Program-made: the position numbers and the translations under genes
NCBI RefSeq assembly: GCF_902459465.1
Contig: NC_047062.1
Coordinates: 21,142,001-21,206,000, forward strand
DNA from: Asterias rubens
Taxonomy: Eukaryota
Reading direction: 5' to 3'
DNA: 64,000 bases
Notes under the pieces: model-generated
The model's database searches: none
The model's input: the letters and a program-made list of their open reading frames with translations, nothing else
What the model was told of the DNA's origin: nothing
Part shown: positions 13,546 to 57,357 of the stretch, one piece after another
Layout of the letters: each line of letters opens with the position of its first letter
Position numbering within the stretch: the first letter of the stretch is position 1

Positions 13546-19998
<6,453 letters not shown>

Positions 19999-20742: not shown

Positions 20743-22866
<2,124 letters not shown>

Positions 22867-24490
22867 GGATGGAACCACGAACAGTTGTGAGAAGTATGAA
22901 TTCATTATAATTGCGTTTATTAAAATGTTTGAACATCCAGAAACATGCAGGCCTAACAAAATGACAGACTCATGGTTTGAAGCATATTCCACAAAGATTT
23001 GTATGTATGCAAAGGAAATGTTGCCGGTCGATTTGTATACAAAGAGTGCCTTCATCATTTAAGAATCATTGGTGTAACGGACGGAGGGGGGGGGGTCTTG
23101 AAACCAATGGAGAATTTTGTATATATATACTTTGAAATGCACTTTGTGCAAATGTATGTTTGAAAACTTTCAAAATGTGTGACATAAAGTTAATTGTTGT
23201 AATGTACATGTATAATTGTGGGGCTAATTATCCCAAATCATTTTCAATTTACCCAGTAAGTTTTTCTTGTGGTTTAATATTTATTTTTGATGTATAAGTT
23301 GTGCCCGTTTGAAGGAATAATCTTGTGAATTTAAAAATTATTTATACTGTTGATTTGTGTACAGCGTATTGAGAAATTTATATTTTAATAATGTATACTG
23401 TTTGAAAACTATAAGAAAACATCTGTGGGCTCTGAACGCTTTTTATCCCTATCATTTTTAGAGAGACACATTATGAGTGTACATACACAGAAATAAAGGG
23501 ATGGTACAAACATTTGCCGTACAACAGACATTAAAAAGAGACTCACCTTTAAGATATTCCCCACGATTATATTAATATTAACGAAATAAAATAATGTACA
23601 TATTGTCTTACTTATAAATTGCATTGTGACTTTACAATACTTGATGGTCCCTAAATTTATACAAAATAATTTACTCCATCCTAACAAATTTATCGGAAAG
23701 GGGGGAAAAAGATTTTAGACTTTCCGAATAATAAAGCCTTGATGTCTTTCATAAAATTTAAGAAGTATTTTTAATTAGACCATTTTGTGTTGCAAGTGTT
23801 TGCACAAATTAGCTGAGTTGTGGTGAAATTAATAAATGTGTATATATTTTTAAAGAAGAAACATTCATTGTACCTCGGAAGTTATTTTGTTTTCCGTTCA
23901 TAGTTTTTATTCATTAGACATTAGAATTAAAATGTTCGGTAGTTACTCATAATTATGAACATGTGTCCCTTCGAAATGATATTAAATTGCATCGGTCGTA
24001 CAACAACAACTACAAAAGTTGATACAAAGATTTTTGGTAGCATAATTAACACTCTCTTAGAAAATGTAGAAAGAGATAACTGATTGACTGAATAATAAAA
24101 GGAAACAAAATAATACATTCTCTGAACACGCCTGGGTCAAAACTGACCAACGTTATGGGGCCCGTGGCATGACCTATTTCTTGGTCATGTTTTTTACGAT
24201 CGAAATTTGCTCAAGTTTGATCCATTTCTGAGTTATCGACACAGATTTCGGGTCATATTGATCCAGAAAGGGGACAGGCCCCCACGGGATCCAGAATCAG
24301 GGAAAATTCTGAAGAGGGACTTTTCATGGTGTAAAGACTTACTGCAATTTTGTTTTTGTTTTAAATAAAATTGATGAATAAATAAAAAATAAGTTATCAC
24401 TAATAAAAAATACTATAAAATTAACCATTTATATCTGAGAATTATTGTGCTACCCAAAACAAAAACTACCAAATCATAATCTTTGTTTAA

Positions 24491-24812
24491 AGGCAGTGGA
24501 CACTATTGGTAATTACTCAAAATAATTATTAGCATAAAAACCTACTTGGTTACGATGAATGGGGAGCTGTTGATAGAATAAAACATTGTGAGAAACGGCT
24601 CCCTCTGCAGGTTTAGAATTTGAGGTCTCGAACTCAAGCATCAGAAAGCACACAACTTCGTGTGACAAGGGTGTTTTTTCTTTCATTATTATCTCGCAAC
24701 TTCAACGACCGATTGAGCTCAAATTTTCACAGGTTTGTTATTTTATGCATATGTTGAGATACAGCAAGTGATAAGACTGGTCTTTGACAATTACCAATAG
24801 TGTCCAGTGTCT
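24491..24812. mobile_element. TTAA MITE family 1 (Kolobok-like), internally deleted copy
   Basis: TTAA|AGGCAGTGGACACTATTGGTAATT ... AATTACCAATAGTGTCCAGTGTCT|TTAA. TTAA TSD with purine-starting termini is typical of Kolobok. Confidence 0.85.
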
Positions 24813-26042
24813 TTAAAACGAGTTTAATTAAGTTTTTGATTTAAAAGGGACGTGGCATGATTTGGAACCAAACGTGTTGAACGTGGAGGTAATGCATTGA
24901 AAAACACAGGAATAAAACAGAAATTGTGGCCAAGAAAGGAGCAGCCATATTTGTTTCTCTGATCAAAGACAATGTATAACCAGACTGAGGCTGAAATATA
25001 AAACAGTCTGGTATGAGCATCAATCGGTCTATCCATACTTGGTATTGCATTATGCATGTAGTGGTTCGGTAAGAATTATCATGATAACCTACACTCTAGG
25101 TTTTCAAACAAACATTTCAAAAATAATAGTTAACCATTATACGTGTAGTATTTTTAGCCTCCCTGTGATTGTGGCATGATGGTGATCGCCAACCGTCACA
25201 AGATATTGCCCACTCGGGGGCAATGTTTTCCCAGCGGTTGCCAAGTAAATTTTAAGCGCATTATAAGCTGATTGGTTCTTCTTCAGTCGCGTTATGAATA
25301 AATTACGAAGTGTATACTCCTCAGGTTCCACGTGTACTGAACCACATCATACGTCAAAGACGTAAACAAGGGGAACGTGTTTCATTATTTTTTGCATAAA
25401 AGATACACCTCATTTTAAAAAGTACTTCCTCATGGATACTACAAAAGAGGTTTCTTTACGTAGTCTAACCATACTCTCGCAAAAGAAACCACTTTTGTAG
25501 TACTAGTAGAATACTGGAGCATCAAACAGCAAATGTGATTTAAATCAATGTCACAATATTCAGCTTTATAAAAAGGGCTCCGTTTTTAGTTAAAAGTGTT
25601 ATTTATTGAAAATACAGCCAATTATGGTCCATCGGATCGAGTCTTCCCATGTCTTTACTGTGTAGCGTTGTTTTCCTAGACCAATATAGGTCACGTGATC
25701 ACATGTAGACATTGGTAGCACAATCGGTTTATTATGTTTACAAGGCCGGCTGATCGTGATGGAAGTTTCAATGTGGAGTGATTGACGCTTTGGTCATCAG
25801 CAAAAGTATTACAAACGGGGAGTCCCGGTAACTAAACCATGATTAGGTGTTGACAAAAGTGAAGACTGGATTCGCCCACGTACCAAAACACACACCACAA
25901 CTTGGTGGTATAAAAGGCGATCTCATCGAGTGGGGGAAACAAGTAATTCTGCACACTTTTTGGTTAAGATAACTGCTTGGATAAAACAATAAAATCTTAT
26001 ATATTTTTTTCAAAAGAAAGTGAGTCCCGTATAGACCTAAAG

Positions 26043-27945
26043 ATGGGACTATGGTCTTCAAAGTTGACGAGTGCGCTCAGCGAGCTGGCTTACGGTCCTT
26101 CCAGCCATATACTTATGCTGGGACTCGATGCTGCAGGTATGAATGTACTAGTTGTATGATTCAATCATTTTTTTCCCGATTATTTTATCAGTTTTTTAGA
26201 GCAACAGATCGTTTCCATGGGAAAGACACTAATTTTGTTTTGTCCTCAGAAAATAAAAGAGTCACAATGTACCCTGTGCCACTTAATCTACATATCAAGA
26301 TTTTCCAATTTCATAAGGGTCAAAGCGGTGCTGTGAATTTTGTAAACTGTTAAAAAAACATTACAACAATCATCGTAAACTTTGCTGACTTCACAATGAG
26401 TGTATTACAAAAAAATTATGCGTTGTTTTTTTACCACAACCGCTTCCCAATTGGACCGTCTGAAATTGCAAAAAGTTTTAAATCATCACCATATCAATTT
26501 TTATTCCGTAGGAACACAATGCAGTGAGCATGCAGAAGTGTAAGAAACGACCCTATCCAAAAGTTTCAATTGACGATTTTCCCCCTTTTTTTCACCATCA
26601 GGAAAGACCACAATTTTGTACAAGCTGAAGCTGAATGAAGAAGTGAGAAGCACCCCTACGATAGGTTTCAACCGAGAAATGGTTTCCCCAATGCCTGGAC
26701 TTACTTTCTCAGTGTGGGACGTAGGCGGTCAGCAGAAAGTACGGCAAATGTGGAGGGATTTATGCTATCAAGGCACCCAGGGTAAGGTCTCTTTACTTAA
26801 CCCCCTCCCCCAACAAATGATTGGCAGACACATTTTAACGACAACCGGTTGGGCTTTTTAAATTTTAAACAAATGGTCCGAGGTCGTTAAAATTTATCAC
26901 CTTTTTTGAGAATATAACGAAACATGAAAACGAAGGGGGCTAAAAGTTTGTTTCGAGTCCAGTGACTTCATGCAGTGAATGGGGGTCATAACTAAAAATC
27001 AAACAACAACAAAAAAAGGAAACTAATAATAAATGTAGGCCCACTTTCGTAACTTTTAAGTTGAACAATTGAACCCCCCCCCCCCCCACTCAAAAAAATA
27101 AAAATTGTTTTCCCTTCTTTTTGTTGATGATCTTCAGGTCTGATCTATGTAGTCGACAGCAGTGATAAGGCACGTTTATCCGAATCAAGAGACGAACTCT
27201 TCGGTATTCTCAATAACCCAGAGCTCCCCTCCACAGTACCCGTAGTCGTCCTCGCCAACAAGCAAGGCTTACCCAGTAAATGTACCCGCTTATTTATCCC
27301 ATCCTCTAAAAGTTGGTTCCTACCTCCATGGTCCAACAGGATTATAGCTTTATATTTTCAACAAACAGTTTGAACGGATATACAATTGTTAGTTTCTTAC
27401 TTTTTAGGGAATTATTAGGGGGGAAAAAAGAAAATAAGATTGACTCAATACTTGTTTACTTGTTGAAAGATAAGTTTGTTTAAAGAATATATATTTTATA
27501 GTTATAACAAATGCAAATTTATTGTGACTCTTTTCCCCCTCATAAACACGAGTGCCCAATTCATGATGCACAATAGTTGAATACTCTTCAATTCTCCCCC
27601 GATATTTTCCAATTTCATGAGGGTCGAAGCGATGCTGTGCATTTTGTAAACTGTTCAAAAATATTACAATCTTTGTAAACTTTGCTGTCTTTACACAATA
27701 AGTGTTCTTAATAATGGTTTGAGGTTTTTCCCCTTCACCAATCAGGTTCCCTTGGACCGTCTGACATTGCACAAGCTTTGAATCTTCATCATCTATCTGG
27801 ACATCCCTGGCACATCCAAGGAACGTGTGCTCCAAACGGAGAAGGCATCTACGAAGCAGTTAACGTCTTAGGGAAGATGGTCGAAGAGTACATGTACGCA
27901 AGTTGGCGTTACAATCCAAACAAAAACTTATTTGGTAACGAGTAA
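26043..27945 (+). CDS. ARF-family GTPase copy 2 (203 aa); intact ORF but G4 motif NKQG and a TE-derived C-terminus (divergent paralog or incipient pseudogene)
   Basis: Exons 26043-26136, 26602-26781, 27138-27275 and 27746-27945; GT-AG, phase 1; 612 nt; no frameshift or premature stop. G4 codon is GGC where copy 1 has GAC. Confidence 0.85.
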
Positions 27946-28253
27946 TGGGGAGAGGTTGATAGTATAAAACATTGTGAGAAACGGCTCCCTCTGAAGTAAC
28001 ATAGTTTTCGAGAAAGAAGTTATTTTCAACGAATTTGATTTTGAGACCTCCAGTTTAGAATTTGAGGTCTCGAAATCAAGCATCTGAAAGCACACAACTT
28101 CGTGTGACAAGGGTGTTTTTCTTTCATTATTATCTCGCAACTCAGACTACCAATTGAGCTCAAATTTTCACAGGTTTGTTATTTTATGCATATGTTGAGA
28201 TACACCAAGTGAGAAGACTGGTCTTTGACAATTACCAATAGTGTCCAGTGTCT
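27921..28253. mobile_element. TTAA MITE family 1, 5-prime-truncated copy overlapping the stop codon of ARF-like copy 2
   Basis: AAAAACTTATTTGGTAACGAGTAATGGGGAGAGG... through ...GTGTCCAGTGTCT|TTAA matches the copies at 24491 and 48871. Confidence 0.85.
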
Positions 28254-28905
28254 TTAAATTGTTCACTGAATACTTTAAAATGCTGGAGTTAACATATAAA
28301 ATGCTGGACTCAACACTTTCAAAGTGTATTCACTCACCGAACTCATGCAAGTGTTGGATTCAACTCTATAGTTTTTAGACTGACGGTGAGGATGGAATCA
28401 CGAACACTTGTGAGAAGTTTGAGTTCATATAATTAATTACGTTTCTCAGATCGTTTTGACATCCAGAAACAGCAGGAATCATAGAATTTCCAAATAAAGA
28501 CTCGTGGGAGACATCCGTCTTTCGAAGTTTATACGCTCATGACCAAAAAGACTTTCGTGTGTGTAAGGAAATGTTTACAGTCAAACTATACGAAGAGTGC
28601 CTTCATCAATTCCACCAATACATATTTAGTTTTTTAAGAATTTGTGGTGAAATGCAGGGGGGGGGGGTATCTTAAACCCATGGAGTTTTTTGTACACATA
28701 CTTGGAAATGTATTTTATGCAAATGTTAAATCTGAAAATGTTGTTGGATAGGGGCCCATGTTTATTTTGTACTTGCATGTATTGTAGCTCAAACGAACAG
28801 AATGTTTACATTCCTTTTTCCATCCATAAGCGAGCAAAGCTAATTCAAAATTTGTGACAGAAAGTATATGATTGTTATATTTATAATTAATGATTTGGGA
28901 CTGAA

Positions 28906-29298
28906 AAACACTGGACACCTTTGGTAATTGTCAAAGACCAGTCTTCTCACTTGGTGTATCTCAACATGTTATGCACAAACTAATTAACAAACCTGTAACA
29001 ATTTGAGCTCAACTCAATTGGTGGTCGAAGTTGTAAGATAATAGTCGAAGAAAAAACACCCTTGTCACACAAAGTTGCTTGATTTCGGGACCTCAAAATA
29101 TAATTCTGAGAACTCGAAATCAAATTCGTGGAACTTCTTTCTCGAAAACTATGTTACTTCAGAGGGGGGGGGGGGGGGCGGCCGTTTCTCACAATGTTTT
29201 ATACTATCAACAGCTTTCCATGGCTTGTTACCAAGAAAGTTTGTATTCTAACTATTATTATAATTATAGAGTAATTATACCAATAGTGTCCAGTGCCT
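28906..29298. mobile_element. TTAA MITE family 1, reverse orientation, degraded
   Basis: CTGGACACCTTTGGTAATTGTCAAAGACCAG ... CCAATAGTGTCCAGTGCCT; absent from the matching position in duplication unit 1. Confidence 0.75.
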
Positions 29299-30200: not shown

Positions 30201-32478
<2,278 letters not shown>

Positions 32479-38900: not shown

Positions 38901-41900
38901 GTTCTATTCCATGTAAAGCTTTATGCTGCTCCCTTTCATTTTTTTTAACTCGATGCTTTGTAAGTATACTGTAGACTATTGGTAATTGTCAAAGACCAGT
39001 CTTCTCACTTGGTGTATATCAAAATATTTGCATAAAATAACAAACCTGTGAAAATTTGAGCTCAATTGGTCGTCGAGGTTGCGAGATAACTATGAAAGAA
39101 AAAATACCCTTGTCACACGAAGCTGTATGCTTTCAGATGCTTGATTTCGAGACCTCAAATTCTAAACCTGAGGTATCGAAATCAAATACGTGGAAAGTTA
39201 CTTCTTTCTCAAAACTACTTCAATTCAGACGCAGCTGTCTCTCACAATGTTTTATACTAACAACCTTTCCCCATTACTCGTTCCAAGTAAGGTTTTATGC
39301 TAATAATTATTTAGAGTATTTAGCAATAGTGTCCACTGCCTTTGAACAGGGTTAGAGGCGTATGTATTCCTTTTGTTTGTACTCTCACTCATGAATGTGT
39401 GAAGAAGGCTACATAAACGCCACGGGTCTTCAAGATAAAACAATAGATTTTAGTCGCCATGATTTTACTGGGTTCTCCCCATAGAGCTCTATGGTTCTCC
39501 CCCACACCTCCCATGTCACTTTCCGTATCGTTTGATCTGAAGCATGGTTGACGGCAACAAATCAACACTATGCAAATGAATCAGTACTGAAAGAGGGTTT
39601 ATTTGTATGTAGTCTATATTATGTGAATATGGGTCATTGGGTGAACATTTTTTCATTGCATAAAAGTTGAAAAATAGTGAAGTTCATTGTCGAACCGCAC
39701 CCCTTTTTTATTGGTGTTGAACCATAAGCCCTGAATTACCATTACTGTGTACCTAAATAGTGAAATGCACTGTTGAACACAGGCATACAGGTTTTTGTAT
39801 TTACATGAAAAGATGGTTGGTAAACACATTTTGAACGAAATGAATTGTGCGCAATAATGTTGATCTCCCATCACTACAAATAGTCATTGTAAAGAAAGCC
39901 AAATATCGCAACATAATTAACATAAACTTTCATTATTCATCGAATTTCCAAGTCCATTCATATAGCTTTGCTGCGGTGTCACTTAATTACCAAGCCTGTG
40001 CCGATTTAGAACTAGAAGGAAATGTTATTTCAGTTTCTTTATTATGGATTCACATTTTGCGGAGTGGAGATTTAGAAAGACTGTAAGCCGATAGCTTCGT
40101 TGCATTACAATCAGCAGTAGGCCCTTGGGAACTTAAAGGCAAAGTATCGAACCGGTTAATGATAGGTCAAACATGCTTGCGCTTACAGAATAGTTCCAAT
40201 CTGAAAGCTCACTTCTTATAAACTTCATACCAGTAGGTCTCTTGAAAATTGTAAAGGCCCCTAGTTATGTCCCCCTACAGTTACGTCTTTATAATGGTGC
40301 AGTCATCAAACCAATGGTACAAAGAGGCTGGAAGAAAAATAGTCAGGTTCCTTTTTGGCATATTAAAAATCAATAGCCATGATCGATTGATATGGTTGAC
40401 ATAGGGTACAAGACAAAGATGGTGGCAAAGAAAATAGTTGGTCAGAGCAGAGTCGAAAAATGAACCTTGCTTATTTCGCCTATTTTGATCACAGCGATTG
40501 AAATAGACACGCGAGATCGAATCCCTGCAAAACAAAAAACATGTGTTCACGCAACGTGACCTCCTGTATTGATGAAACTCTCACTGCTTGGTTTGAGATG
40601 GCGTGATTAAAACAAAAAAGTAAGATTTTATTCATCCTTCTGAAGAAAAAAAAAACCGCTGACTTATTATCTCTTTAAGTGCAATGTTCAGAAAAGCAGT
40701 TTTGTTTTCTGAATTACAACTGCTGCACGTTATATGATGTTTGGAAACAGATGTGTGGCACTCGTCAATCGGCAATATAGCATTATAATACGACTGCCTT
40801 AGCGTGAGCCAGCGCATGTCCACCCACGAAATGAATGCTAAAACGCGCCTGTGTTGGTGGATGATAAGGGACGGTTTGTTGGATATTGTGTTTTAAATTT
40901 AAGCCAACATCTTTAGCATTTTCTACACAACTAATTTACCCGAATCCAATAGTGCACATGTCCACCCTCAGAATGGCTGATGGCCTGGAGCGTTGGTGTG
41001 ATGGTAACTCAATGGTATTATTTTGAAAATAAAATTCGAAATGAAATGCAACTCGGCCCGTCCATGTATAGTATTTCAGCTTTACAATTATGTTTCAAAC
41101 TGTGAATGATTGGTTTCGGAAGGAACACCACGCGCCGGTTTTCCAATCAGCACGCCGGAGAAACAACCATTTTCATGACGTCATCATTTCGACAAAACTT
41201 TGGGGTCACATTACAATATTTTTCAAAGAAAGCGCTCAACACGATTTTGAGAAACTGCTTATTCATATCCTTTACGGTTTCAGACATGTTAAGATTCATT
41301 TAAATTGCCTGGGGTATAGACAAATCAAATAAAACAACTTCAAAAGTGTCTGCCAATGAATTTAGACAGAAATATTTCTTCCTATAAGAGTATGACCTAT
41401 TACATCTCTGTCCTTACTCTAGGGTTATATGAACCTCGTAAGCTTACATATCAACTTTGTTTTTAGACAATCACAATATCTGTTGTATTACTTCTTTAAT
41501 TCAATGGGCTATTGCATAACAGCTGGATGGCAGCCATCATAAGAGCGTATACATAATCTGGATGAGGAACCGCCATTTATGATATTACTATTCAATCGAC
41601 ATGTGGGTATGATAATGTATCCTTATGCAAGGGTAAAAAGAAACTCGCGTTTGAAAGAATAATCATATACATGACAACAAACACGGGTTATAAAGTATGT
41701 AGGCCTACTCCTATTTCCAGAAAATCCTGTCCCATGAAAAATAACCCGGGAAAGATCCGTTTCAAAAAGTACACATGCATTTCAAAAAGTTTGTTTGTAT
41801 GGTATGTTGGGACTAGTCCATTTTTGACGATCAATGGCCTCATTGGAGCCAACAACCAATATGACAATAGGAGCATCGATGCCAAAAACCAGGAGGCAAC

Positions 41901-44900: not shown

Positions 44901-47900
44901 CATTTGAATTGACCCGGAATCCGGGTCATTTGAATTGACCCGGAATCCGGGTCACTTCAAGTGACCCGGAATCCAGGTCATTTCAAGTGACCCGGAATCC
45001 GGGTCATTTCAAGTGACCCGGAATCCGGGTCATTTGAATTGACCCGGAATCCGGGTCATTTGAATTGACCCGGAATCCGGGTCATTTGGAATGACCCGGA
45101 ATCCGGGTCATTTCAAATGACTATTTGATTGGAAGTGTGTTACATTTTGATTATTGTAGGAAAATAAAAGAGAAAAATCAGCTAATAACTTACACAATTA
45201 TTAAGACAACTAATGGACGCAGGTGTCAATTTTGAGGCGATCGTGGCCGAGTGGTCATGTACACCGGACTCAAGCTCCGGTGTTTCTGGTTAGCAAGATG
45301 TGGGTACAAGTCCTAGTCATGACCTTTTGTTGACCCAGAATCCAGGTGGGTACAAGCCGAGTCCTTTTGAATGATCAAATGTTTTGACCTGGATTCCGGG
45401 TAATTTCAAGTGACCCGGAATCCGGGTCATTTCAAGTGACCCGGAATCCGGGTCATTTGAATTGACCCGGAACCCGACTTCAAAATGTAGCGATTGTGGT
45501 CCCGAGAATTGCCAGGCACAGGGGGGCTAAGTTGGGGGATGCCAACATCGCAAAAGTTGTCTGATGTTTAGGCGATGGGACTGCAAATAAAAAGGACCCT
45601 CATGGGGGACTGGGACTTGAATCAATTATATATCACCATGCGGTCCACAACATCCAGGACGGGAGCACTCAAGCGTGAGAATACAGATTACTGTGCTATG
45701 CTCTCTCCCGTCCTGTGTGCTCCGTGCCAAAAATCGAAAGCTCGCTATTATCGTAGGTTCAACACCTCAACAAGAACGTCTTGCACCAAGACTAGACAAG
45801 TCAATGTAATCACACTCATCGTTAAAGGCAAGACTAGCCTTCACAGTTGGTGTATCTCAACATATGCATAAAATAACAAACCTGTGAAGATTTGAGCTCA
45901 ATCGGTCATCGAACTTGCGAGATAATAATGAAAGAAAAAACCCACCCTTGTCACACGAAGTTGTGTGCGTTCAGATGGTTGATTTCGAGACCTCAAGTTC
46001 TAAATCTGAGGTCTCGAAATCAAATTCGTGGAAAATTACTTCTTTCTCGAAAACTATGGCACTTCATATGGAGCCGTTTCTCACAATGTGTTATACCATC
46101 AACCAATCGAGGTTTTGTGGTCAGAATTATTTTGAGTAATTACCAATAGTGTCCACTGCCTTTAAGCTTGTATATAAATCTACTGTGAAAACATTGGCTT
46201 AAAACAACATACACATCATGGCACAAATCGGCACGCGCGGCATGATTATTTACCACCAACCCATTTAGCACTTAATTTATCTTGGTCTAATTGAAATTCA
46301 CTTTGATTTTATTGGGGCACGGTGATAGGGCAGTGAAAGCACTCATGCTGTCATGCATTTTGTAAGAGGGGCAAGTCACCCATGGGGGACGTGAATAATG
46401 CGTATCACTCTGCTGAGATTGATTGAGGGCAGAGAGGAATGGATGGGTTTAGGACCAATGATCGATCCCTGTGGAACACTGATGTGTATATTCGTGAAGG
46501 AAGATGCCCTATAATTATGGTATCTTTTAGCAGCGGGTTTGAAAACGGGATGAACTTATTCTCAATAGGGTGTATAGAAATCATCAGCAAAGAGTTGTGT
46601 GCTTTTTAGTGGACAAAAATCAGTTGTTGATTCGAGTGGTAATAATATAATATACAAATTTTTAGAATGGAATTTTGCTTCTGTTAAAAAAGAGACGTTT
46701 CCTCGTGTGTGGAATTCACGGAAAAAAGTTCGACCTTTTCAAAGACTTTCGGATATGCCATGACAAGGAGTAGCAACGGATCCTACAAAATCATGAGACA
46801 GAATAATCTAATATATTTTCAAAGGATTCAGGAATTCCTGATGTAAACTTCAGCTTTTCAAAATGGTCTTCGAATGGGTTATTTATGACTTGGTCTGTTC
46901 CACTCATTTGAGCATTATAAACCCCACCGGATAATTTACACTCTTAATAGCGACCTCGTGCTCTTTAAAAGTTGCTTTCTCGAGTGTTTGAAAATGAGTG
47001 TGGAAACTGTGTATAATATCTGAATAAAAAAAAAAGTAAATAACTTTCCTTTCCTGTTATTTTCTTTGACCCTGTGCGGTGTGTTATGTTTTCAGTATAA
47101 TGTAAATTTGTATTATCACGAAATCGGTGCACAGACTGATATATCCTCAGATAGTTTAAATTCTTCAGGAATTCCTCGACTTGAGGGGCTGTATGTATAT
47201 CATGGAGGTTTCCTTCCTCCATGGTAGACCTCAGTGAGTAACTAACCAGACTATTTATGTATGATGGCAGGGACAACCTCATGTTGACCATGTCAAGAAT
47301 GTTGGGAGTTTAACCTAACAAAATACCACATCAATTTCTGTATTTCTAAAAGCAAGAAATGTTTGTATTTCTTTTAATAATAGGTCATACTATCACCGGA
47401 CGTCAATTGCTGGTGAAGATTAAGTTAACTATCATCAACCAACAAATCTTAATATTTCAGTAAAATAACTAGCCAATCATGAATTCTGTTTAATACGTAA
47501 TTTAAGCATACCTCTGAAAGTGGATTTCATTTTTTTTTGTTCTGCAGGTAAAACCACCATTTTATACCGGGTGAAACTCGGCGAGGCAGTCACGACAATA
47601 CCCACAATCGGCTTCAACGTAGAAACAGTCACTCCTGTACCCAATGTCACCCTATGCGTGTGGGACGTGGGCGGTCAGCAGAAAGTCAGAGCACTATGGC
47701 AACACTATTTCTGCGAAACTCACGGTAAGGGTGTTTTCTTTTGAAAAAGTGATTATTCATACTCTATTTTCGAAAGGCATGATACATTGGTAATTGTCAA
47801 AGACCAGTATGCTCACTTGGTGTGCCCCTCTGAAAAGTCTTTTTTTTTTGCTCAATTTGTCTCCAGCTCTCCAATTCTCTTTACCAAGTAATTTGTTATG

Positions 47901-50900
47901 GCTGCTTGTGTTGGGAGTAATTATCAAAGGTGTAACCTCCCTTTCAATATAAATTCATAACACAATTCTGAGACAAATTTCCTCATGATATCTGAAGGGG
48001 GAACTGGACCATGTTCCTCGATGAGTCCCTGAACGGTTCACTGGTTGTGAATAATTCTCGTCCTCAGGGCAGACCAAACCAATCACCGTGAAAAACAGAA
48101 ATTAATATCTACACCGTGAGGTGAACTAATTTAGTAATTTGGTCATGGGGTTAATTATGCATAACCTTCATGCATTGATTGAACCTTTGTCCAGAACTTT
48201 TAGAGTTTGACCAGGGATCAAGGTAGTCGACACTTGGTCAAAGAAGAGCTTGTTATGTTGTGGTACACTTAGCGTATCCGTCAACGGTTTAAAAAAGACA
48301 GCGGGTTGTGTTCTTGGTGAGAAAAACAATGGAAAGGAGAGATGAGTTTTAATGAGATTTTTTTTGGAAATATATCATTCAAATCATTCCAAATTCAGCA
48401 GAAGATGTTACTGTCTGAAATACTGCCAATGGGTGGGGAAATCACATTTAGTTATTCAGCTCAATTTGAATATGAAAATTTTTTCGTTTTGAATTTGATT
48501 GAATGTCTCAGGTTTTTGTGTTAATTGAAGAAAACAAATTATTTAAATTTTTTCAAATTTCCGGATTCATTATAATGCTGCAGCTCCCCCTTTAAAATCT
48601 ACCATTTGCCTCAAACCTCGCTTGAACTACACGAATGACGTTGCCATCATGTGAAGAAAGATGTTGGCCTAACCGACATTTTCTATAAATTATTTGGTTT
48701 TCAATTTGTGTTGGGATGGGTGGCTTATAGGCCATTGGGTGGGATGTGGCTTTTCACCGCATGGCGAAGACATTTCCAAGGCCCTTACCAGTTAATTGTC
48801 AGCCAGGTAATGTCCATGAGGGCGGTGACAGAGGAGGGTTTGTGTCTTGACTTCATGCAGTTAAGATTAAAGGCAATGGACACTATTGGTTACTACTAAA
48901 AATAATTATCAGCATAAAACCTCTCTTGGTAACGAGTAATGGGGAGAGGTTGATAGTATAAAACATTGTGAGAAACGGCTCCCTCTCTGAAGTGACATAG
49001 TTTTCGAGAAAGAAGTAATTTTCCACCAATTTGATTTCGAAACCTCAAGTTTAGATTTTGAGGTCTCGAAATCAAGGATCTGAAAGCACACAACTTCGTG
49101 TGACAAGGGTGTTTTTTCCGACGACCAATCCAGCTCAAATTTTCACAGGTTTGTTATTTTATGCATAATGTTGAGATACACCAAGTGAGAAGACTGGTCT
49201 TTGACAATTACCAACAGTGTCCATTGTCTTTAATAGTGTTATGCATAATATTCTGTTTAAGCAGCTCTTTGGAATTATAGGCATTGGTTGTTAATTCCAC
49301 CACCTTGTCCGTTGTATACATGGGTTCATAACCTTGTGGGTGCGCGAATGTCACCAGAGAGACATAATTAATAGGGTGTGGGTATCATAGCCACTCTTAC
49401 CACGTCACCCGCACCCTATTTCTTAAGTGCATCCTTTTTGACAAGATGCAGGAAGCGTTTTTTATCCTCAGTTGGCGCGTGTCAGCGTGACTCAGCAAGG
49501 GCAAATTTGCGCTCCAATTTCCTGATCAAGGCAATTATTTGTGTAAATCAAGAACGAGAAGAATTTTGAACGAAAATTATCTAGGAAATCGGGACGTGGC
49601 TGGTTTCTACACATTGGGGGTGTAGTGAAAAGGGGCGTGGCTGTGGAAGTCACGATCCCGTTAGAGATTTCAATCTCTCGGTCAGTGACGGTCATTCTGA
49701 CACTGAACACTTTCACGGCTCTTTGGCAATATTAGTGTCAAACAATTGACGTCAAATATTGGGTTAAAGCCATTGGACCCTTTCGGTACAGAAAAAAAAA
49801 ATCACAGATTTACAAATAATTTACAGGGTTTACAGAAGGTAATGGTGAAAGACTCCTCTTGAAATATTAGTCCATGAAATGCTTTACTTTTTGAGAAAAC
49901 GGTAAAACAATATAAATTCTCGTTAGCGAGAATTACGGATTTGTTATAAACACATGTCATGACACGGCGAAACGCGCGAAAACAGGAGTGGGTTTTCCCG
50001 TTATTTTCTCCCGACTCCGATGTCCGATTGAGCCTAAATTTCCACAGGATTGTTATTTTATATATAAGTTGTGATACACGAAGCTTTAACAGCTTTAATG
50101 TTGTGAAGGAAATGCAGTTTGATACGCGATCCTTTGCACAATCCGGTCTTTAACGGAGACACACAAATAGCATAAAGAATACCGTTTATAATAATGTTGT
50201 CACATGGATCTTATTTTACGGCGTATCTGTAAACTGTTAACTGTAATAATGTGGCTGTACTGCAATTTACCCTTTTTAACTGCGCCTTTCAGAATGTACG
50301 GCATGTGCAATGATTGTTTTAAAGTGATTAAGGAAGAAAATGACCCTTAAAGGCGCTGTATCACGTTTGGTAATTGTCAAAGACCAGTGTTCTCATCCCA
50401 TCATAAGCATAAAATAACAAGCCTGTGAAAATTTGGGCTCAACTGGTCATCGAAGTTGCGAGAAATTGACAAAAGAAAAAACACTCTTGTTGGACGATTT
50501 TGTCTAGCTCGAAGTCTTTTATTATTTTAGTGAGAAAGTACCTCTTTCTCAAAAACTACGTTACTTCAGAGGGAGCCGTTTCTCACCATATTTTATACTA
50601 TCAACACTGATCGCTAACAAGTAATGTTTTTAAATAATATTTGTTTTGAGTAATTACCAAACGTGTACATTCCATTTAAAATTCCTTTGCTGCAAAAACA
50701 TCGTCAGCAGAATCAAAGCCCTTGCACAAACAGGAGCAGTGACATAATTCTTCGCAATACTTCCTTTTGCAGCATTGCACTGTGTAAGTACGTCAATGGT
50801 CTGTATTATGTTTTATATATTATGGGCATCTGTTCTATATGGAAACAGGAACACTCTTTTATTGTTAGCCCCCCTACTAAGTGTGAGTTAAAGATCTTTC

Positions 50901-53900: not shown

Positions 53901-56900
53901 ACTGTTTACCGAAAGGGTCCAATGGCTTTAATAACAGGATCATGTCAGCTATTTTGTGTGATTTTGAGCTGAGTCCGTTCTCAAACTATTGGTAAAGACT
54001 GCAAATACATTCAACGACACAAAAACAAAGTTTTTAAATGTATTTGATTCAGAATTACTCAGATTGTCATCAGTGGCGTGACTAAACATTCATTTTGTTG
54101 TTCTTCCTCAAAAATACCACAACTCATGCTCAATCTGGTTCCCATCTCCAATGCATTAAATCATTATAATGGCAAAACACACACACACACACACACCCCC
54201 ACAGGTAATGGAATAGAGTGCAAGCGTTAATCATTCTTTCCACACGATACTTAGATATCCAAGTTTGCTTATGATTTTTAATGAAAAGACATATAGGCAT
54301 ATATGGTGAAAGCAATGGCGATTGATAGGCATACAGCTCAAAGTACACTTCGGTTTCGTAAAACGTCAGTCCCCCGTATAGCTTCTGTTATCTCCTGAGA
54401 AAACATACCCAATTTATATTTAGTTAATATTTACTATCGAATTGCTATGAAGAAAAACAAACAGTACAACGTACAGATTCTGAAGAAACGAAAGCAAAAC
54501 AACACCAAATGCGTCAGTGAAGATATGCAATGGTCATGTCCCGTGGAAATGAAAACAACAATGACGTGTACATTATTTCGAAAGCTTTGGGTGAAATGGT
54601 GTTACTAATAATAATAATAATATTAATAGTACTTTTGAATTGGTATCTGAAAGGATAAGCCTGCACGAAAACGTCTAATCGTAACCCACTGGTTGTCAAT
54701 GAAACACCCATGCATTATTTGCTCATCAACCGTCGACCTGATTATAGGGTTGTTTTGGGTCAGCAACTGTAATGTTCGAAAGCTTTGGGTACATGTTGTT
54801 AATGATCTTTGAACTTTTCTATTGGTATCTGAAAGGTATAATATTAAATAAGCCTGCACAGAAACGTATATAACCGCAACCCGTAGTTCGAAAACACCCA
54901 TACATATTAACACATCACCCATCGGCCTGAGGTATAATAATGTTTTTTTTTTAAAGGGTGTGCCCTTTAAAAATGTCCACTATTATACTGCCGATAGAGT
55001 AATTACACGGTATCGTTTAAATGGCATTATTTTGAAAGCTTTTGGTAAAATTTGGTCAAGTAGGCCCTACATGATCTTTGAACTTGTCTATTAGTGTCTG
55101 AAAGGTATATAAGCCTGCACAGAAACGTAATCGCAACCCGTAGTCCGGAAACACCCATTCATATATTTTACACATCACCAATCGGCCTGTTGTGTAGTTT
55201 TTTGGGTCAGCAAAAAAAATGTCCGTTTACCCTATATAACATTTTACAACATGCCGAAAGAGCTGTATTGCACGGTATTGATAAACTAGCAAATAAAAAT
55301 AATAAAAGCAAAAGGAGTTTCGATTCAACCGGTCCCACACCGCCACAGGCATTGTGATTATATAGCCAGTTCTATTGTGTGCTTTCTACTCCCTTAACAA
55401 TACCCAGCCATGAATTCAAGTATATAATCCGACTATATAAGATGCACTTGCGACTTTTCTCTCTTTGAAGTTCAACTATTTTGAGGTTTAGCGCGGCCTG
55501 TTGTGGAATGTCCCGCCATAAGAGCCATGCTGTTATACTGTTCAATTGTATTGGGTGTAGTTCCTGGAGTTGTTGTAACAGTTGTGGCATTGGGACAGCC
55601 ATGCGCTCTTGATGAAAGATAACCGTAGCCCATGCATGTGTAATGTAGGCTTTTTTAGCGAAGAAATTTAATATGATATTTCCATTATTCAAAACAGGAA
55701 TGTTGATTTAAAAAAAAAACTTATTCGGTACGGAGATTTGGGTTCTAGGCCTATATCTGTGAGTTTACAATGGATAACATGATCCAATCATTTTGGCAAA
55801 AAAACCAAAAAGAACCAAATAGATACCCGAAACAAGTCAAGATGCGTTCGTGCACATTCGTGGACAACTTTGTCCGGTATTTTTCTGTAAGGCACTAATA
55901 CAAAAAAGGAAACAGCTGAACAGGCATGACCGTGAATCACCGAGAACCCGGGGTTTCACGGTTGATATGAGGGGAAATCGGCTCGACTGTCGTTAACTTG
56001 TAATGGTTTTACAAGATGGCATCCACTCTCATACCAAAGTACCAACTTGAGCCCATAAATTAAGAAAATCGTAAATTATTCTGCCCTAATCCTCACATTC
56101 ACCCCTTGAGTGAAAAGCATAGCATGCGATGCCATAATCCAAAGGAAAGTAATCTATGTTTTTATACATATAACAGCTGAGTTTCTTCTCTTAACTCAAT
56201 TTAAAACTATTGTGACAAGCAGTCTCTTTATTTTCACCCGGCGATTGTCAAATTAGCCACAGCAAAGCCTGCCATTTTGTAAACCATGTAATCCCCTTTT
56301 GTATCACTAACTCAAATATAAGTTACTTCAGTTATATTTTCAAATCTGTAACAATAAACAGACTGCATAATTCATTCATCTATTTATTTGACTAACTGCA
56401 AATAACGGGTGTTTCTCCTTCGTTTATGTCCTATTGCACACAGGCCTTATATTCGTGGTGGACAGTGCCGATAGAGGGCGCTTGTGGGAGGCGAGAGATG
56501 AGCTGTTTCGAGTGGTGTCGAATCCTAACATGACTAAAGGAATTCCAGTTCTTGTCTTAGCGAATAAGCAAGATTTACCAGGTAAGCAGAGTACTATGTT
56601 TTCCTGACAAATAAGTGTTAGGTGGGTCGAAAACATTCTTGAAAATCCGTTTAAAGTGAGTCATTTTCCACAAGAACAGATCCTACCTAAAGAAGGCCAC
56701 CAACTCTCTATATTATTTTTACACCATTGGCCTTTTTCGCCCAAAAGTAATAAAATCTTATAATGTCACAAACAAAAACAAACATTACACAATGTTGTCT
56801 CTGGCGTTGTTACACACAATGATATTCACAAGTTTTTTATTATAAATCCTTAGTTTTCAAAGATTGTCATTACAATCTTGGTTTGCTTCTGTTTGTTGCA

Positions 56901-57357
56901 ATTAAAGTGTTAGACATGAGTCACTCATAATTTCACATGTTGGCCTCTCTAGCTGTAACTCACTATCTCCCCAAAAGAATGAGAAAACTGATATGTGAAT
57001 AAATTTACTTCTTGGAGGTAGGACTGGTTGCCTGTAAATTGCCTCGTGTGACATGATCAATGTCAAATGAACATTCATTTACATCTTCAACTTTATACTC
57101 TCAATAAACCAAGCACACGTTTCTCTCTGTGTCAACCCCCAACAGGAGCATACAATGCAGCACGCATCTCAGAAGTGATGGACCTTCAGAGTCTCTCGGA
57201 CAATCATCCGTGGATGGTAATAGAAACCCAGGCCAGCACGGGAGAGGGTCTCCAAGAAGCCTTTAAAACCATGGCTAGAATGGTCAAACAATTCCATAAA
57301 GACTCCAGTAAAGCAGAGCTTGGAAACTCCAAATCGGGAGATGCAACAGAGGTCTAG
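35941..57357 (+). CDS. ARF-family GTPase copy 4 (218 aa) with very long introns 1 and 2
   Basis: Exons 35941-36070, 47548-47724, 56444-56581 and 57146-57357; the 177- and 138-nt internal exons and phase-1 introns match copies 1 and 3; 657 nt. [26 protein letters not shown]; G5 is TQAS. Joining the exons across 11.5-kb and 8.7-kb introns is inferred because no other matching exons were seen. Confidence 0.88.
38970..39341. mobile_element. TTAA MITE family 1, reverse orientation
   Basis: CTATTGGTAATTGTCAAAGACCAG ... CAATAGTGTCCACTGCCT, with the internal TTGATTTCGAGACCTC/GAGGTATCGAAATCAA hairpin. Confidence 0.8.
42372..43125. repeat. 4 diverged tandem copies of a unit of about 175-205 bp
   Basis: The GATT(C/T)..GCC.TGGTCGT anchor falls at 42372, 42547, 42735 and 42919. 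Shared CTTCTTGAAATTAAT, CTAAGTGTG and AAGTCCCCAACA motifs. Confidence 0.9.
44279..45478 (+). repeat. Two tandem copies (offset 865 bp) of a composite unit: head of about 240 bp with a tRNA-like SINE segment, followed by a 26-bp satellite
   Basis: 44279-44520 is near-identical to 45144-45385. A-box TGGCCGAGTGG 44379-44389; B-box-like GGTACAAGTCC 44438-44448. Arrays of 23 units and about 3.5 units follow the two heads. Confidence 0.9.
44521..45118. repeat. 26-bp palindromic minisatellite, 23 units
   Basis: GACCC anchor every 26 bp from 44547 to 45093. Unit is TGACCCGGA-A-TCCGGGTCA plus a 7-nt spacer, TTTCAAG or TTTGAAT. Confidence 0.98.
45826..46161. mobile_element. TTAA MITE family 1, reverse orientation, with a small subterminal deletion
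   Basis: TTAA at 45822-45825 and 46162-46165. Perfect internal 16-bp inverted repeat at 45979-45994 / 46008-46023. Confidence 0.85.
46300..47300 (-). mobile_element. Decayed non-LTR retrotransposon reverse transcriptase fragment
   Basis: Minus-strand frames contain PKVFEKV (like RT motif SKVFEKI, about 46730-46755) and [18 protein letters not shown] (like GVPQGSILGP, about 46452-46505) in the expected order, with many stops and frameshifts. Confidence 0.55.
48871..49229. mobile_element. TTAA MITE family 1, near full length (359 bp)
   Basis: TTAA|AGGCAATGGACACTATTGGT ... ACCAACAGTGTCCATTGTCT|TTAA. Confidence 0.9.
49768..50085. mobile_element. TTAA MITE family 2, 3-prime truncated
   Basis: TTAA|AGCCATTGGACCCTTTCGGT...; near-identical to the copy starting at 53562. 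Confidence 0.85.
50351..50675. mobile_element. Family-1-related TTAA MITE, diverged
   Basis: TTAA at 50347-50350 and 50676-50679; internal TTGGTAATTGTCAAAGACCAG and AGAGGGAGCCGTTTCTC motifs. Confidence 0.7.
51032..51061. repeat. (TGTAT)6 microsatellite
   Basis: Read directly from the sequence. Confidence 0.9.
52100..52395. repeat. Diverged local duplication of about 110 bp, two copies about 180 bp apart
   Basis: ACGATAGGAAG..AAGAATCACAA..GAAAGTTTGCGTAT..CAAAGGTCAACACT.CAAGTTT occurs at about 52105-52210 and 52288-52390. Confidence 0.75.
53562..53927. mobile_element. TTAA MITE family 2, full length (366 bp)
   Basis: Perfect 20-bp TIRs AGCCATTGGACCCTTTCGGT / ACCGAAAGGGTCCAATGGCT, with TTAA on both sides. 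Confidence 0.92.
54570..55250. repeat. Three diverged tandem copies of a unit of about 190-270 bp
   Basis: (G)TATCTGAAAGG..TAAGCCTGCAC.GAAACGT..AACCC recurs at about 54642, 54826 and 55096; GAAAGCTTT recurs at about 54580, 54778 and 55035. Confidence 0.7.

What the first reader, a model, noticed from the sequence alone, without database searches (positions are those of the whole stretch)
26602..27275. ARF-like copy 2 looks like a pseudo-GTPase: NKQD to NKQG plus remodelled switch I/II, with the ORF intact
Seen: G4 codon GAC (copy 1) is GGC in copy 2 (exon 3). Exon 2 has about 10 amino-acid changes plus a one-codon insertion, against 5 synonymous codon changes. The changes cluster in effector surfaces: [12 protein letters not shown] to RSTPTIGFNREM, and LWRHYY to MWRDLCY. 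G1, DVGGQ, the myristoylation Gly, splice sites and frame are all retained. Established: the NKxD Asp hydrogen-bonds the guanine base; Ras D119 substitutions weaken guanine-nucleotide binding, and D119N shifts specificity to xanthine. Inference: either a fast-cycling or nucleotide-poor regulator or GEF decoy, or a pseudogene in very early decay.
Basis: partly seen in the sequence, partly recalled or inferred. Interest (0 to 1): 0.75.

Follow-up and report, generated by a model that had tools for sequence, protein, structure and literature searches.

The report
Drifting sea-star ARF gene duplicate
A young extra copy of a sea-star ARF-type switch gene has lost the aspartate that grips guanine while its reading frame stays open, but comparison with a sister species shows it changing as fast as its introns, so it is more likely a duplicate drifting towards death than a new kind of switch.

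Summary
Copy 2 (26043-27945, four GT-AG exons, open 203-codon ORF) reads NKQG where copy 1 reads NKQD (GGC at 27266-27268). Exon 2 has exactly 10 replacements, one inserted codon and 5 synonymous changes.

The syntenic Asterias amurensis locus has an ortholog of copy 2, and it changes the picture:
- It keeps NKQD, so D-to-G arose in the window's lineage.
- It shares the switch II remodel and the foreign C-terminal tail, so those are older.
- It carries its own lesions: P-loop A-to-D and a 2-codon deletion.

Between the species, copy 2 has 15 nonsynonymous and 6 synonymous differences (omega 0.75), not distinguishable from neutral. Copy 1 has 2 and 7 (omega 0.09). Outside one conversion tract, copy 2 exons diverge as fast as its introns (2.8% against 2.65%).

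The switch I cluster is best read as old copy 2 divergence that gene conversion erased in A. amurensis. A second individual keeps the invariant Ile49 and has a destroyed TATA box. No spliced copy 2 RNA was seen, but sensitivity was poor. The Gly codon was not confirmed in a second individual.

Most likely this is a dispensable duplicate in early decay. A functional low-affinity paralog is not excluded.

The scan had already noted the four-gene cluster and the exon 4 identity tract on this window.

The parts
26043..26136 (+). Copy 2 exon 1 (Met1, Gly2, N-terminal helix with F5S and F12L relative to copy 1, start of the P-loop)
   Evidence: Translation and splice sites; 4-way codon table
26602..26781 (+). 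Copy 2 exon 2: GKT of the P-loop, switch I, interswitch, switch II. It has 10 replacements plus 1 inserted codon relative to copy 1.
26652..26654 (+). Codon ACC (Thr49) at a position that is Ile in all 97 homologs compared. The second individual (L002) has ATC (Ile), the ancestral state.
26757..26765 (+). Switch II codons GAT TTA TGC (Asp-Leu-Cys) replacing His-Tyr of WRHYY, with one inserted codon. Shared with A. amurensis (Asp-Leu-Ser).
27138..27275 (+). Copy 2 exon 3. It differs from the A. amurensis ortholog at a single base.
27266..27268 (+). G4 codon GGC (NKQG). It is GAC in window copy 1 and in A. amurensis copy 2, and GAT in A. amurensis copy 1. Asp is present in 100% of 97 homologs.
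27746..27945 (+). Copy 2 exon 4. The G5 motif TCAP is retained. Its first ~136 bases lie in a tract identical to copy 1. From 27893 the sequence is foreign to copy 1.
27893..28383 (+). 491-bp block that replaces 14 bp of copy 1. It removes the native C-terminus (KKLGSR) and pushes the original 3' UTR downstream.
   Evidence: homology to copy 1 ends at 27892 and resumes at 28384
27922..28258 (+). High-copy repeat of about 335 bp, with at least 8 copies in the window. It supplies the last 7 codons (KNLFGNE) and the stop codon of copy 2.
25909..25916 (+). TATAAAAG box upstream of copy 2, conserved in copy 1 and in both A. amurensis copies. It is destroyed by a cluster of changes at 25912-25918 in L002 and in run X3.
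25930..25931 (+). Junction of a deletion of about 65-70 bp, specific to the window's species, directly 3' of the TATA box. The segment is present in copy 1 and in both A. amurensis copies. L002 also has the deletion.
20743..22866 (+). Copy 1, the conserved parent-like paralog (NKQD, WRHYY; 2 aa differences from A. amurensis)

Best explanation
Copy 2 is a young tandem duplicate of the ARF-type gene copy 1. It arose before the window's species (a sea star; Asterias rubens according to another note of this scan) split from A. amurensis.

Since then it has evolved under almost no protein-level constraint. The open frame is what remains of a gene that is dispensable and in the earliest stage of decay.

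Its history, as read from the sequences:
- Early, shared by both species: the 3' end was disrupted by an insertion that includes a repeat element; the switch II residues corresponding to Arf1 His80 and Tyr81 were lost and a codon was inserted; the hydrophobic face of the N-terminal helix was weakened.
- Later, in each species separately: G4 Asp-to-Gly plus a deletion beside the TATA box in the window's lineage; P-loop Ala-to-Asp plus a 2-codon deletion in A. amurensis.
- Throughout: short gene-conversion tracts from copy 1 intermittently overwrite parts of copy 2. This explains the exon 4 identity tract and the copy-1-like switch I in A. amurensis.

Shown: the substitutions, their polarity, the neutral-like rate and the differences between individuals. 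Inferred: loss of function. If the protein is made at all, it would bind guanine nucleotide weakly and would miss the usual ARF effector and GEF contacts.
For: Orthology:
- Synteny is conserved (L001: copy 1, copy 2, copy 3 in the same order).
- The A. amurensis copy 2 shares MWRDLxY and the YMYAxWRYNPN tail but has NKQD and [13 protein letters not shown].

Rates (Nei-Gojobori counts):
- Copy 1, window against A. amurensis: N=2, S=7, omega 0.09.
- Copy 2: N=15, S=6, omega 0.75. The two differ at Fisher p=0.02. Copy 2 does not differ from the neutral N:S ratio (binomial p=0.6).
- Copy 2 exon divergence outside the conversion tract is 12/426 (2.8%), against 34/1283 (2.65%) in its introns (p=0.86).
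- Relative-rate tests give copy 1 0-2 unique replacements and copy 2 9-17 across four outgroups (window pair: 0-1 against 12-17, p<=0.004).

Conserved positions:
- Of 75 columns at least 90% conserved in 97 homologs, the window's copy 2 departs at 10 (six of them 100% columns), A. amurensis copy 2 at 9, and copy 1 at 2.

Second individual:
- L002 matches 25863-27078 at 99.1%. It has the ancestral Ile49 and a destroyed TATA box. The same TATA cluster is seen in run X3.

Promoter and tail:
- A deletion specific to the window's species lies next to the TATA box.
- The stop codon and the last 7 codons lie in a repeat element, and the two species end the ORF differently.

RNA:
- RNA-type runs X19 and X24 hold copy 1 exon 4/3'UTR contigs. 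In X19 the contig carries 25 letters ahead of exon 4 that do not lie on the intron.
- The same two runs have zero depth over copy 2 exons 2 and 3 and over most of exon 1.
- The only RNA-run contig on copy 2 (X20) runs from exon 2 into intron 2.
Against: - There is no stop, frameshift or splice lesion in either species.
- All three coding indels on the copy 2 lineage are multiples of three, while 0 of 9 intron indels are. Two of the three are conditioned on the ORF having been picked because it is intact, and most intron indels sit in homopolymers.
- With only 21 substitutions, a moderate constraint (omega about 0.3-0.4) cannot be excluded.
- Replacements tend to fall in the switch regions (p=0.059), which decay alone does not predict.
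- A. amurensis annotators call the ortholog a protein-coding gene.
- The absence of RNA rests on small, contig-only runs of other Asterias-like organisms, in which copy 1 itself is barely seen.
Confidence: 0.58

Rival explanations
1. Copy 2 is a functional, fast-evolving ARF paralog whose switch surfaces and guanine pocket have been reshaped. It would be a low-affinity or fast-exchanging (or nucleotide-independent) GTPase-like protein that binds different partners from copy 1 or titrates ARF regulators.
For: - The ORF and all splice sites are intact in two species.
- Coding indels are all in frame: a 6-bp deletion in exon 1, a 3-bp insertion in switch II, and a 6-bp deletion in A. amurensis.
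- Gly2, P-loop GKT, switch I Thr, DVGGQ and G5 are retained in the window.
- Replacements tend to fall in the switch regions (11/52 against 5/62, p=0.059).
- Atypical, nucleotide-poor ARF-family members are known. ARL14 and ARL15 purify without nucleotide, and pseudoGTPase classes have been described (PMC12722892).
Against: - The Gly state is absent from the sister species.
- Omega is 0.75, and exons diverge as fast as introns.
- The sister species carries different motif lesions, P-loop A>D and a deletion before switch I.
- An invariant-site replacement and a TATA-destroying haplotype both differ between individuals.
- The C-terminal tail is unconserved and derived from a repeat.
- No spliced RNA was found.
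Confidence: 0.27
2. The Gly codon is not a property of the gene in this species. It would be a rare allele of the sequenced individual, or an assembly error, with copy 2 otherwise NKQD as in A. amurensis.
For: - The codon could only be read in the assembly itself. Runs X1 and X2, which hold 0.83-0.92 of the words, are probably the assembly's own sample.
- On the same haplotype, Thr49 is a derived variant that the second individual lacks.
- The window haplotype differs from L002/X3 at about 0.9% of sites.
Against: - X3 contig 27245-27541 spans the codon with 3 differences. The two that are listed lie elsewhere (27336, 27356) and none is listed at 27267, but the list was truncated.
- A single-base error in a finished assembly is uncommon.
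Confidence: 0.15
3. The switch I cluster (E45, R47, R56, M58, S68) is a recent burst of adaptive change in the window's lineage, not old copy 2 sequence.
For: - All 8-10 sites are unique to the window's copy 2 in the 4-way comparison. A. amurensis copy 2 equals copy 1 there.
- N:S in the tract is 7:2.
Against: - The same ~75-146-base tract has no site where both copy 2 orthologs differ from copy 1, against 25 such sites in the rest of exons 1-3 (Fisher p=5e-7).
- The density of window-unique sites in the tract (7.0%) matches the paralog divergence elsewhere (8.7%).
- A burst would need an earlier homogenisation and then at least 8 changes where 1.7 are expected (P=4e-4). One conversion from copy 1 in A. 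amurensis explains both facts.
Confidence: 0.15

Closest known systems
Canonical ARF GTPases (Arf1/Arf6), the nearest solved structures
   Same: - The Arf-domain match is strong (E=3.6e-53).
- The best PDB relatives of the ortholog are Arf and Arf1 chains (E about 1e-49 to 1e-51), ahead of ARL1 and ARL3.
- Gly2, GLDAAGKT, PTIGFN, WDVGGQ and TCA-type G5 are present.
   Different: - G4 is NKQG.
- The residues corresponding to Arf1 His80 and Tyr81 are Asp-Leu with an inserted residue. Tyr81 is part of the Phe51/Trp66/Tyr81 effector triad (own knowledge).
- The residues corresponding to Arf1 Ile46, Val53, Thr55 and Thr64 are replaced.
- The C-terminal tail is foreign and comes from a repeat.
   Same: Identity is 54-60% over the G domain (63% for one shorter hit). 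The LYKLKLNE and ETV(S/T)P.PG.T motifs are shared. Copy 1 and copy 3 are ordinary members.
   Different: Copy 2 departs from this group at 10 of 75 highly conserved columns. Assignment to ARL11 or ARL14 was not tested here.
PseudoGTPases and atypical ARLs (Stiegler and Boggon classes; ARL14 and ARL15 purify apo)
   Same: A nucleotide-contact motif is lost while the GTPase fold sequence is retained (PMC12722892).
   Different: Known pseudoGTPases are conserved in their degenerate state. Here the degenerate G4 is confined to one species lineage and the gene evolves at a neutral-like rate. No biochemical data exist.
Ras Asp119 / Arf Asp129 substitutions in the NKxD motif
   Same: Same position. 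The Asp hydrogen-bonds the guanine base. Substitutions weaken binding, speed exchange or switch specificity to xanthine nucleotides (own knowledge, e.g. Ras D119N). NKxD changes in ARF3 and ARF1 are deleterious (PMC9652361).
   Different: Those are engineered or disease alleles of essential genes. This is a natural change in a redundant duplicate, and its effect is untested.
Young unprocessed (duplicated) pseudogenes and duplicates under relaxed selection with interlocus gene conversion
   Same: - Tandem origin, with asymmetric acceleration of one copy.
- Omega near 1, and exon rate equal to intron rate.
- Promoter and 3'-end lesions.
- Conversion tracts from the parent copy.
   Different: No stop, frameshift or splice-site lesion has occurred yet in either species.

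Membership tests
ARF family small GTPase (Pfam PF00025) | Arf-domain profile match above the curated cut-off | tested here: met
   180 bits against a cut-off of 22.3, residues 18-181
ARF family small GTPase (Pfam PF00025) | N-terminal Met-Gly (myristoylation site) and an amphipathic helix | tested here: inconclusive
   Gly2 is present. Two hydrophobic residues of the helix are changed (F5S, F12L) relative to copy 1. Lipidation cannot be tested here.
ARF family small GTPase (Pfam PF00025) | G1 P-loop GxxxxGK[ST], G2 Thr, G3 DxxGQ | tested here: met
   GLDAAGKT, PTIGF and DVGGQ are present in the window's copy 2. The A. amurensis ortholog has GLDDAGKT.
ARF family small GTPase (Pfam PF00025) | G4 NKxD with the guanine-specifying Asp | tested here: not met
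   NKQG, codon GGC at 27266-27268. Asp is invariant in 97/97 homologs.
ARF family small GTPase (Pfam PF00025) | Switch II WRHY(F/Y), including the Tyr of the effector triad | tested here: not met
   WRDLCY. The Tyr column is 100% conserved and the His column 92% conserved in homologs.
PseudoGTPase (functional, conserved degenerate GTPase fold) | One or more nucleotide-binding or hydrolysis motifs lost | tested here: met
   G4 Asp is lost
PseudoGTPase (functional, conserved degenerate GTPase fold) | The degenerate state is retained by selection across species | tested here: not met
   The A. amurensis ortholog has NKQD. Omega is 0.75, and exon divergence equals intron divergence.
PseudoGTPase (functional, conserved degenerate GTPase fold) | Impaired nucleotide binding or hydrolysis shown biochemically | not testable with these tools
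   Needs recombinant protein and mant-nucleotide or thermal-shift assays
PseudoGTPase (functional, conserved degenerate GTPase fold) | The gene is expressed | tested here: inconclusive
   No spliced copy 2 contig in X19, X20 or X24. One unspliced exon 2-intron 2 contig in X20. Copy 1 is only faintly seen, so sensitivity is low.
Unprocessed duplicated pseudogene | A disabling lesion (stop, frameshift, lost splice site) | tested here: not met
   The 203-codon ORF is open and all borders are GT-AG. The A. amurensis ORF is also open.
Unprocessed duplicated pseudogene | Neutral pattern of substitution | tested here: met
   N:S is 15:6 against a neutral expectation of 3.3:1 (p=0.6). Exons 2.8% against introns 2.65%.
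Unprocessed duplicated pseudogene | Loss of transcription or promoter damage | tested here: inconclusive
   A 65-70-bp deletion lies beside the TATA box. A TATA-destroying haplotype is found in L002 and X3. Transcription was not measured.

The most novel reading that the evidence does not exclude
Copy 2 is a retained, Asterias-specific ARF-derived pseudo-switch. In this reading its effector face (switch I, switch II triad) and then its guanine pocket were reshaped, its C-terminus was recruited from a repeat element, and the open frame is maintained by selection (in-frame indels only). It would act as a nucleotide-poor decoy or adaptor for ARF regulators. The sister species, after gene conversion restored switch I, would be a natural revertant for comparison.
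Probability: 0.22. Interest if true: 0.55.

Novelty: new member of a known kind. Interest (0 to 1): 0.3.

Why it matters
If the main reading is right, this is an ordinary stage in the life of a gene duplicate, caught unusually early. The frame is still open while motif residues, promoter and 3' end are already eroding, and gene conversion from the parent copy intermittently repairs parts of it.

This bears on annotation. An intact ORF with a Pfam hit would be called a functional GTPase here. It also shows that 'pseudo-enzyme' calls made from a single genome need an ortholog check.

If the minority reading is right, it would be a very young natural pseudoGTPase in the ARF family. The sister-species allele keeps Asp, which would give a ready-made comparison for how NKxD loss and switch remodelling change nucleotide handling.

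Tried and rejected
- a protein search by exon reference failed because the frame was wrong. It was repeated with the spliced protein.
- exact look-ups of the copy 1 and copy 2 proteins found neither in the collection. Because the conserved copy 1 is also absent, this says nothing about annotation or expression of copy 2.
- the single read-laying run was flooded by repeats (24436-24835, 22436-22635, 25436-25835, 27036-27235). Its difference list was truncated, so base 27267 in X3 could not be read with certainty.
- a JGI metagenome scan for the codon context found nothing.
- a protein search with the stop-to-stop ORF around exon 3 (27131-27370) found no near-identical ORF from another individual.
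- a search with the exon 2-3 peptide found no spliced copy 2 fragment. It did give L002 (genomic, second individual) and L003 (copy-1-like contig of another assembly).
- L003 was tried as an outgroup to polarise synonymous changes. This was rejected as unreliable because L003 may be a copy 1 ortholog, not a pre-duplication outgroup.
- Frame maintenance as evidence of function: 3/3 coding indels are in frame against 0/9 intron indels. This was down-weighted because two of the three are conditioned on how the ORF was ascertained and most intron indels are in homopolymers.
- Gene conversion from another paralog in the window as the donor of the switch I cluster was rejected. Copies 1, 3 and 4 all read [11 protein letters not shown].
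- Structure prediction was not run, because it would not discriminate between the readings.

Full report
**What is there**

The window carries a tandem array of intron-containing ARF-family genes on the + strand.
- Copy 1: exons 20743-20842, 21213-21389, 21836-21973, 22700-22866 (193 aa).
- Copy 2: exons 26043-26136, 26602-26781, 27138-27275, 27746-27945 (203 aa).
- Copy 3: about 30201-32475.
- A fourth, long gene: exons near 36037, 47541, 56443 and 57166.

Copy 2 has canonical AG/GT borders at every exon and an uninterrupted ORF. It matches Pfam Arf at E=3.6e-53. The nearest solved structures to its ortholog are true Arf and Arf1 chains (E about 1e-49 to 1e-51), ahead of ARL1 and ARL3.

**The observation**

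- G4 is GAC in copy 1 and GGC in copy 2 (27266-27268).
- Exon 2 has 10 replacements, one inserted codon and 5 synonymous codon changes.
- [12 protein letters not shown] becomes RSTPTIGFNREM, and LWRHYY becomes MWRDLCY.
- Gly2, GLDAAGKT, the switch I Thr, DVGGQ and the G5 TCAP remain.

In Arf1 numbering (from the alignment plus known Arf1 numbering, own knowledge), the changes fall at Ile42, Thr44, Ile46, Val53, Thr55, Thr64, Leu77, His80, Tyr81 (followed by an inserted residue) and Asp129.

**The sister species**

The only close database relative is a 222-aa protein of Asterias amurensis (P0001, 91% identity). Its locus (L001, chromosome CP134952.1) is syntenic and has copy 1, copy 2 and copy 3 in the same order. 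P0001 is the ortholog of copy 2. It shares the MWRDLxY insertion, the shortened N-terminal linker and the YMYAxWRYNPN tail.

It differs from the window's copy 2 in these ways:
- It has NKQD and [13 protein letters not shown].
- It has its own lesions: GLDDAGKT in the P-loop, a 6-bp deletion just before switch I, and V>M next to that deletion.

Three conclusions follow:
- The switch II remodel and the new tail are older than the species split.
- Asp-to-Gly is derived in the window's lineage. The codon is flanked, 38 nt upstream and 8 nt downstream, by sites where both copy 2 orthologs differ from copy 1, so a conversion artefact is unlikely.
- Each species has hit a different invariant motif.

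**Rates**

Nei-Gojobori counts over 188 aligned codons:
- Copy 1, window against A. amurensis: N=2, S=7, omega 0.09.
- Copy 2: N=15, S=6, omega 0.75.
- The two differ at Fisher p=0.02. Copy 2 is not different from the neutral N:S expectation (p=0.6).

Copy 2 introns differ at 34/1283 sites (2.65%). Its exons outside the tract discussed below differ at 12/426 sites (2.8%, p=0.86).

Relative-rate tests with four outgroups give copy 1 0-2 unique replacements and copy 2 9-17. For the window's pair the counts are 0-1 against 12-17 (p<=0.004).

Against 97 homologs, 75 columns are at least 90% conserved.
- The window's copy 2 departs at 10 of them. These include the 100% columns Ile49, Val56, Thr68, Leu81, Tyr85 and Asp135.
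- A. amurensis copy 2 departs at 9.
- Copy 1 departs at 2.

**Gene conversion and the switch I cluster**

In a 4-way site-pattern analysis, the 5' two-thirds of exon 2 contain no site where both copy 2 orthologs differ from copy 1. The rest of exons 1-3 have 25 such sites. The same tract has 8 sites unique to the window's copy 2 (10 if the codon deleted in A. amurensis is counted), against one elsewhere (Fisher p=5e-7).

The density of these unique sites (7.0%) equals the paralog divergence elsewhere (8.7%). A lineage-specific burst would need a prior homogenisation and then at least 8 changes where 1.7 are expected (P=4e-4).

The simpler reading is one conversion of about 75-146 bp from copy 1 into copy 2 in A. 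amurensis. On that reading the remodelled switch I is old copy 2 sequence.

**A second individual**

An ENA marine metagenome scaffold (L002) matches 25863-27078 at 99.1%, so it comes from the same species and another genome.
- It keeps the remodelled exon 2 but has Ile at codon 49 (26653 C>T, the ancestral state). Thr49 is therefore a derived variant that differs between individuals, at a family-invariant site.
- It carries a cluster of changes at 25912-25918 that destroys the TATAAAAG box. That box is conserved upstream of copy 1 and of both A. amurensis copies.
- The same cluster and other L002 variants appear in run X3.
- L002 ends 60 nt before exon 3, so it does not test the Gly codon.

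Both haplotypes of the window's species also lack about 65-70 bp directly 3' of the TATA box, a segment that the other three gene copies retain.

**The 3' end**

Homology to copy 1 stops at 27892 and resumes at 28384. The intervening 491 bp include a repeat of about 335 bp (27922-28258) that has at least 8 copies in the window and enormous depth in the read contigs. This repeat provides the last 7 codons and the stop of copy 2.

A. amurensis has a further ~455 bp at that junction and ends its ORF differently. The tail is therefore not conserved.

**Transcription**

Both run searches and the single read-laying run were used.
- RNA-type runs X19 and X24 hold contigs of copy 1 exon 4 plus 3' UTR. 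In X19 the contig has 25 letters ahead of exon 4 that do not lie on the intron.
- The same two runs have zero depth over copy 2 exons 2 and 3 and over most of exon 1.
- The only RNA-run contig on copy 2 (X20, a metatranscriptome) runs from exon 2 into intron 2. It is therefore DNA or unspliced RNA.
- These runs are small, contig-only and from other Asterias-like organisms. This is absence of evidence, not evidence of absence.

**What speaks for function**

- There is no disabling lesion in either species.
- All three coding indels are in frame, against 0 of 9 intron indels. This is weakened by ascertainment and by the homopolymer context of the intron indels.
- Replacements tend to fall in the switch regions (p=0.059, excluding the converted exon 4).
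- The ARF family is known to contain atypical, nucleotide-poor members (PMC12722892).

With 21 substitutions, a moderate constraint cannot be excluded.

**Verdict**

- Most likely (about 0.58): copy 2 is a dispensable young duplicate in the earliest phase of decay. Asp-to-Gly is one of several recent, lineage-specific hits.
- About 0.27: it is a functional, fast-evolving, low-affinity ARF-like protein.
- Separately, about 0.15: the Gly codon is only an allele of the sequenced individual.

Noticed in passing
window 21049-21102 and about 26436-26500: Intron 1 of both ARF copies contains a decayed duplicate of the intron 3/exon 4 boundary. In copy 1 it translates as [17 protein letters not shown]. 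This is an old internal duplication that predates the gene duplication.
   Followed up: partly
window 24486-24817, 27922-28258, 28904-29242 (inverted), 31007-31345, 38968-39296, 45830-46104, 48916-49233: A repeat family of about 335 bp with many copies in the window and word depths in the millions in read contigs of four runs. One copy supplies the stop codon of copy 2.
   Followed up: partly
window 22464-22611: A GC-rich palindromic, MITE-like element in intron 3 of copy 1. Its depth is about 59,000 in X3. Part of it is also present in A. amurensis copy 1.
   Followed up: no
window 25909-25918; L002: A haplotype found in L002 and X3 replaces TATAAAAGGC with a cluster of four changes, removing the TATA box of copy 2.
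   Followed up: yes
L001 10001-11911: A. amurensis copy 2 has P-loop GLDDAGKT, a 6-bp deletion before switch I, and about 455 bp extra (L001 11877-12332) before the repeat. Its annotated product (222 aa) splices to an extra terminal exon.
   Followed up: partly
L003 (GCA_014845345.1, contig JACSEG010063169.1) 377-827: A copy-1-like ARF gene of another assembly. Exons 2 and 3 are contiguous there, so intron 2 is absent, while intron 3 is present.
   Followed up: partly
window 17859-17963 (- strand): A Rab-like GTPase exon (HTIGVEFG...[10 protein letters not shown]) just upstream of the ARF array. It corresponds to a 210-aa gene called on the minus strand in L001.
   Followed up: no
window 36037, 47541-47741, 56443-56580, 57166-57294: A fourth ARF paralog whose exons appear spread over about 21 kb (NKQD retained). 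It was not modelled in detail.
   Followed up: no
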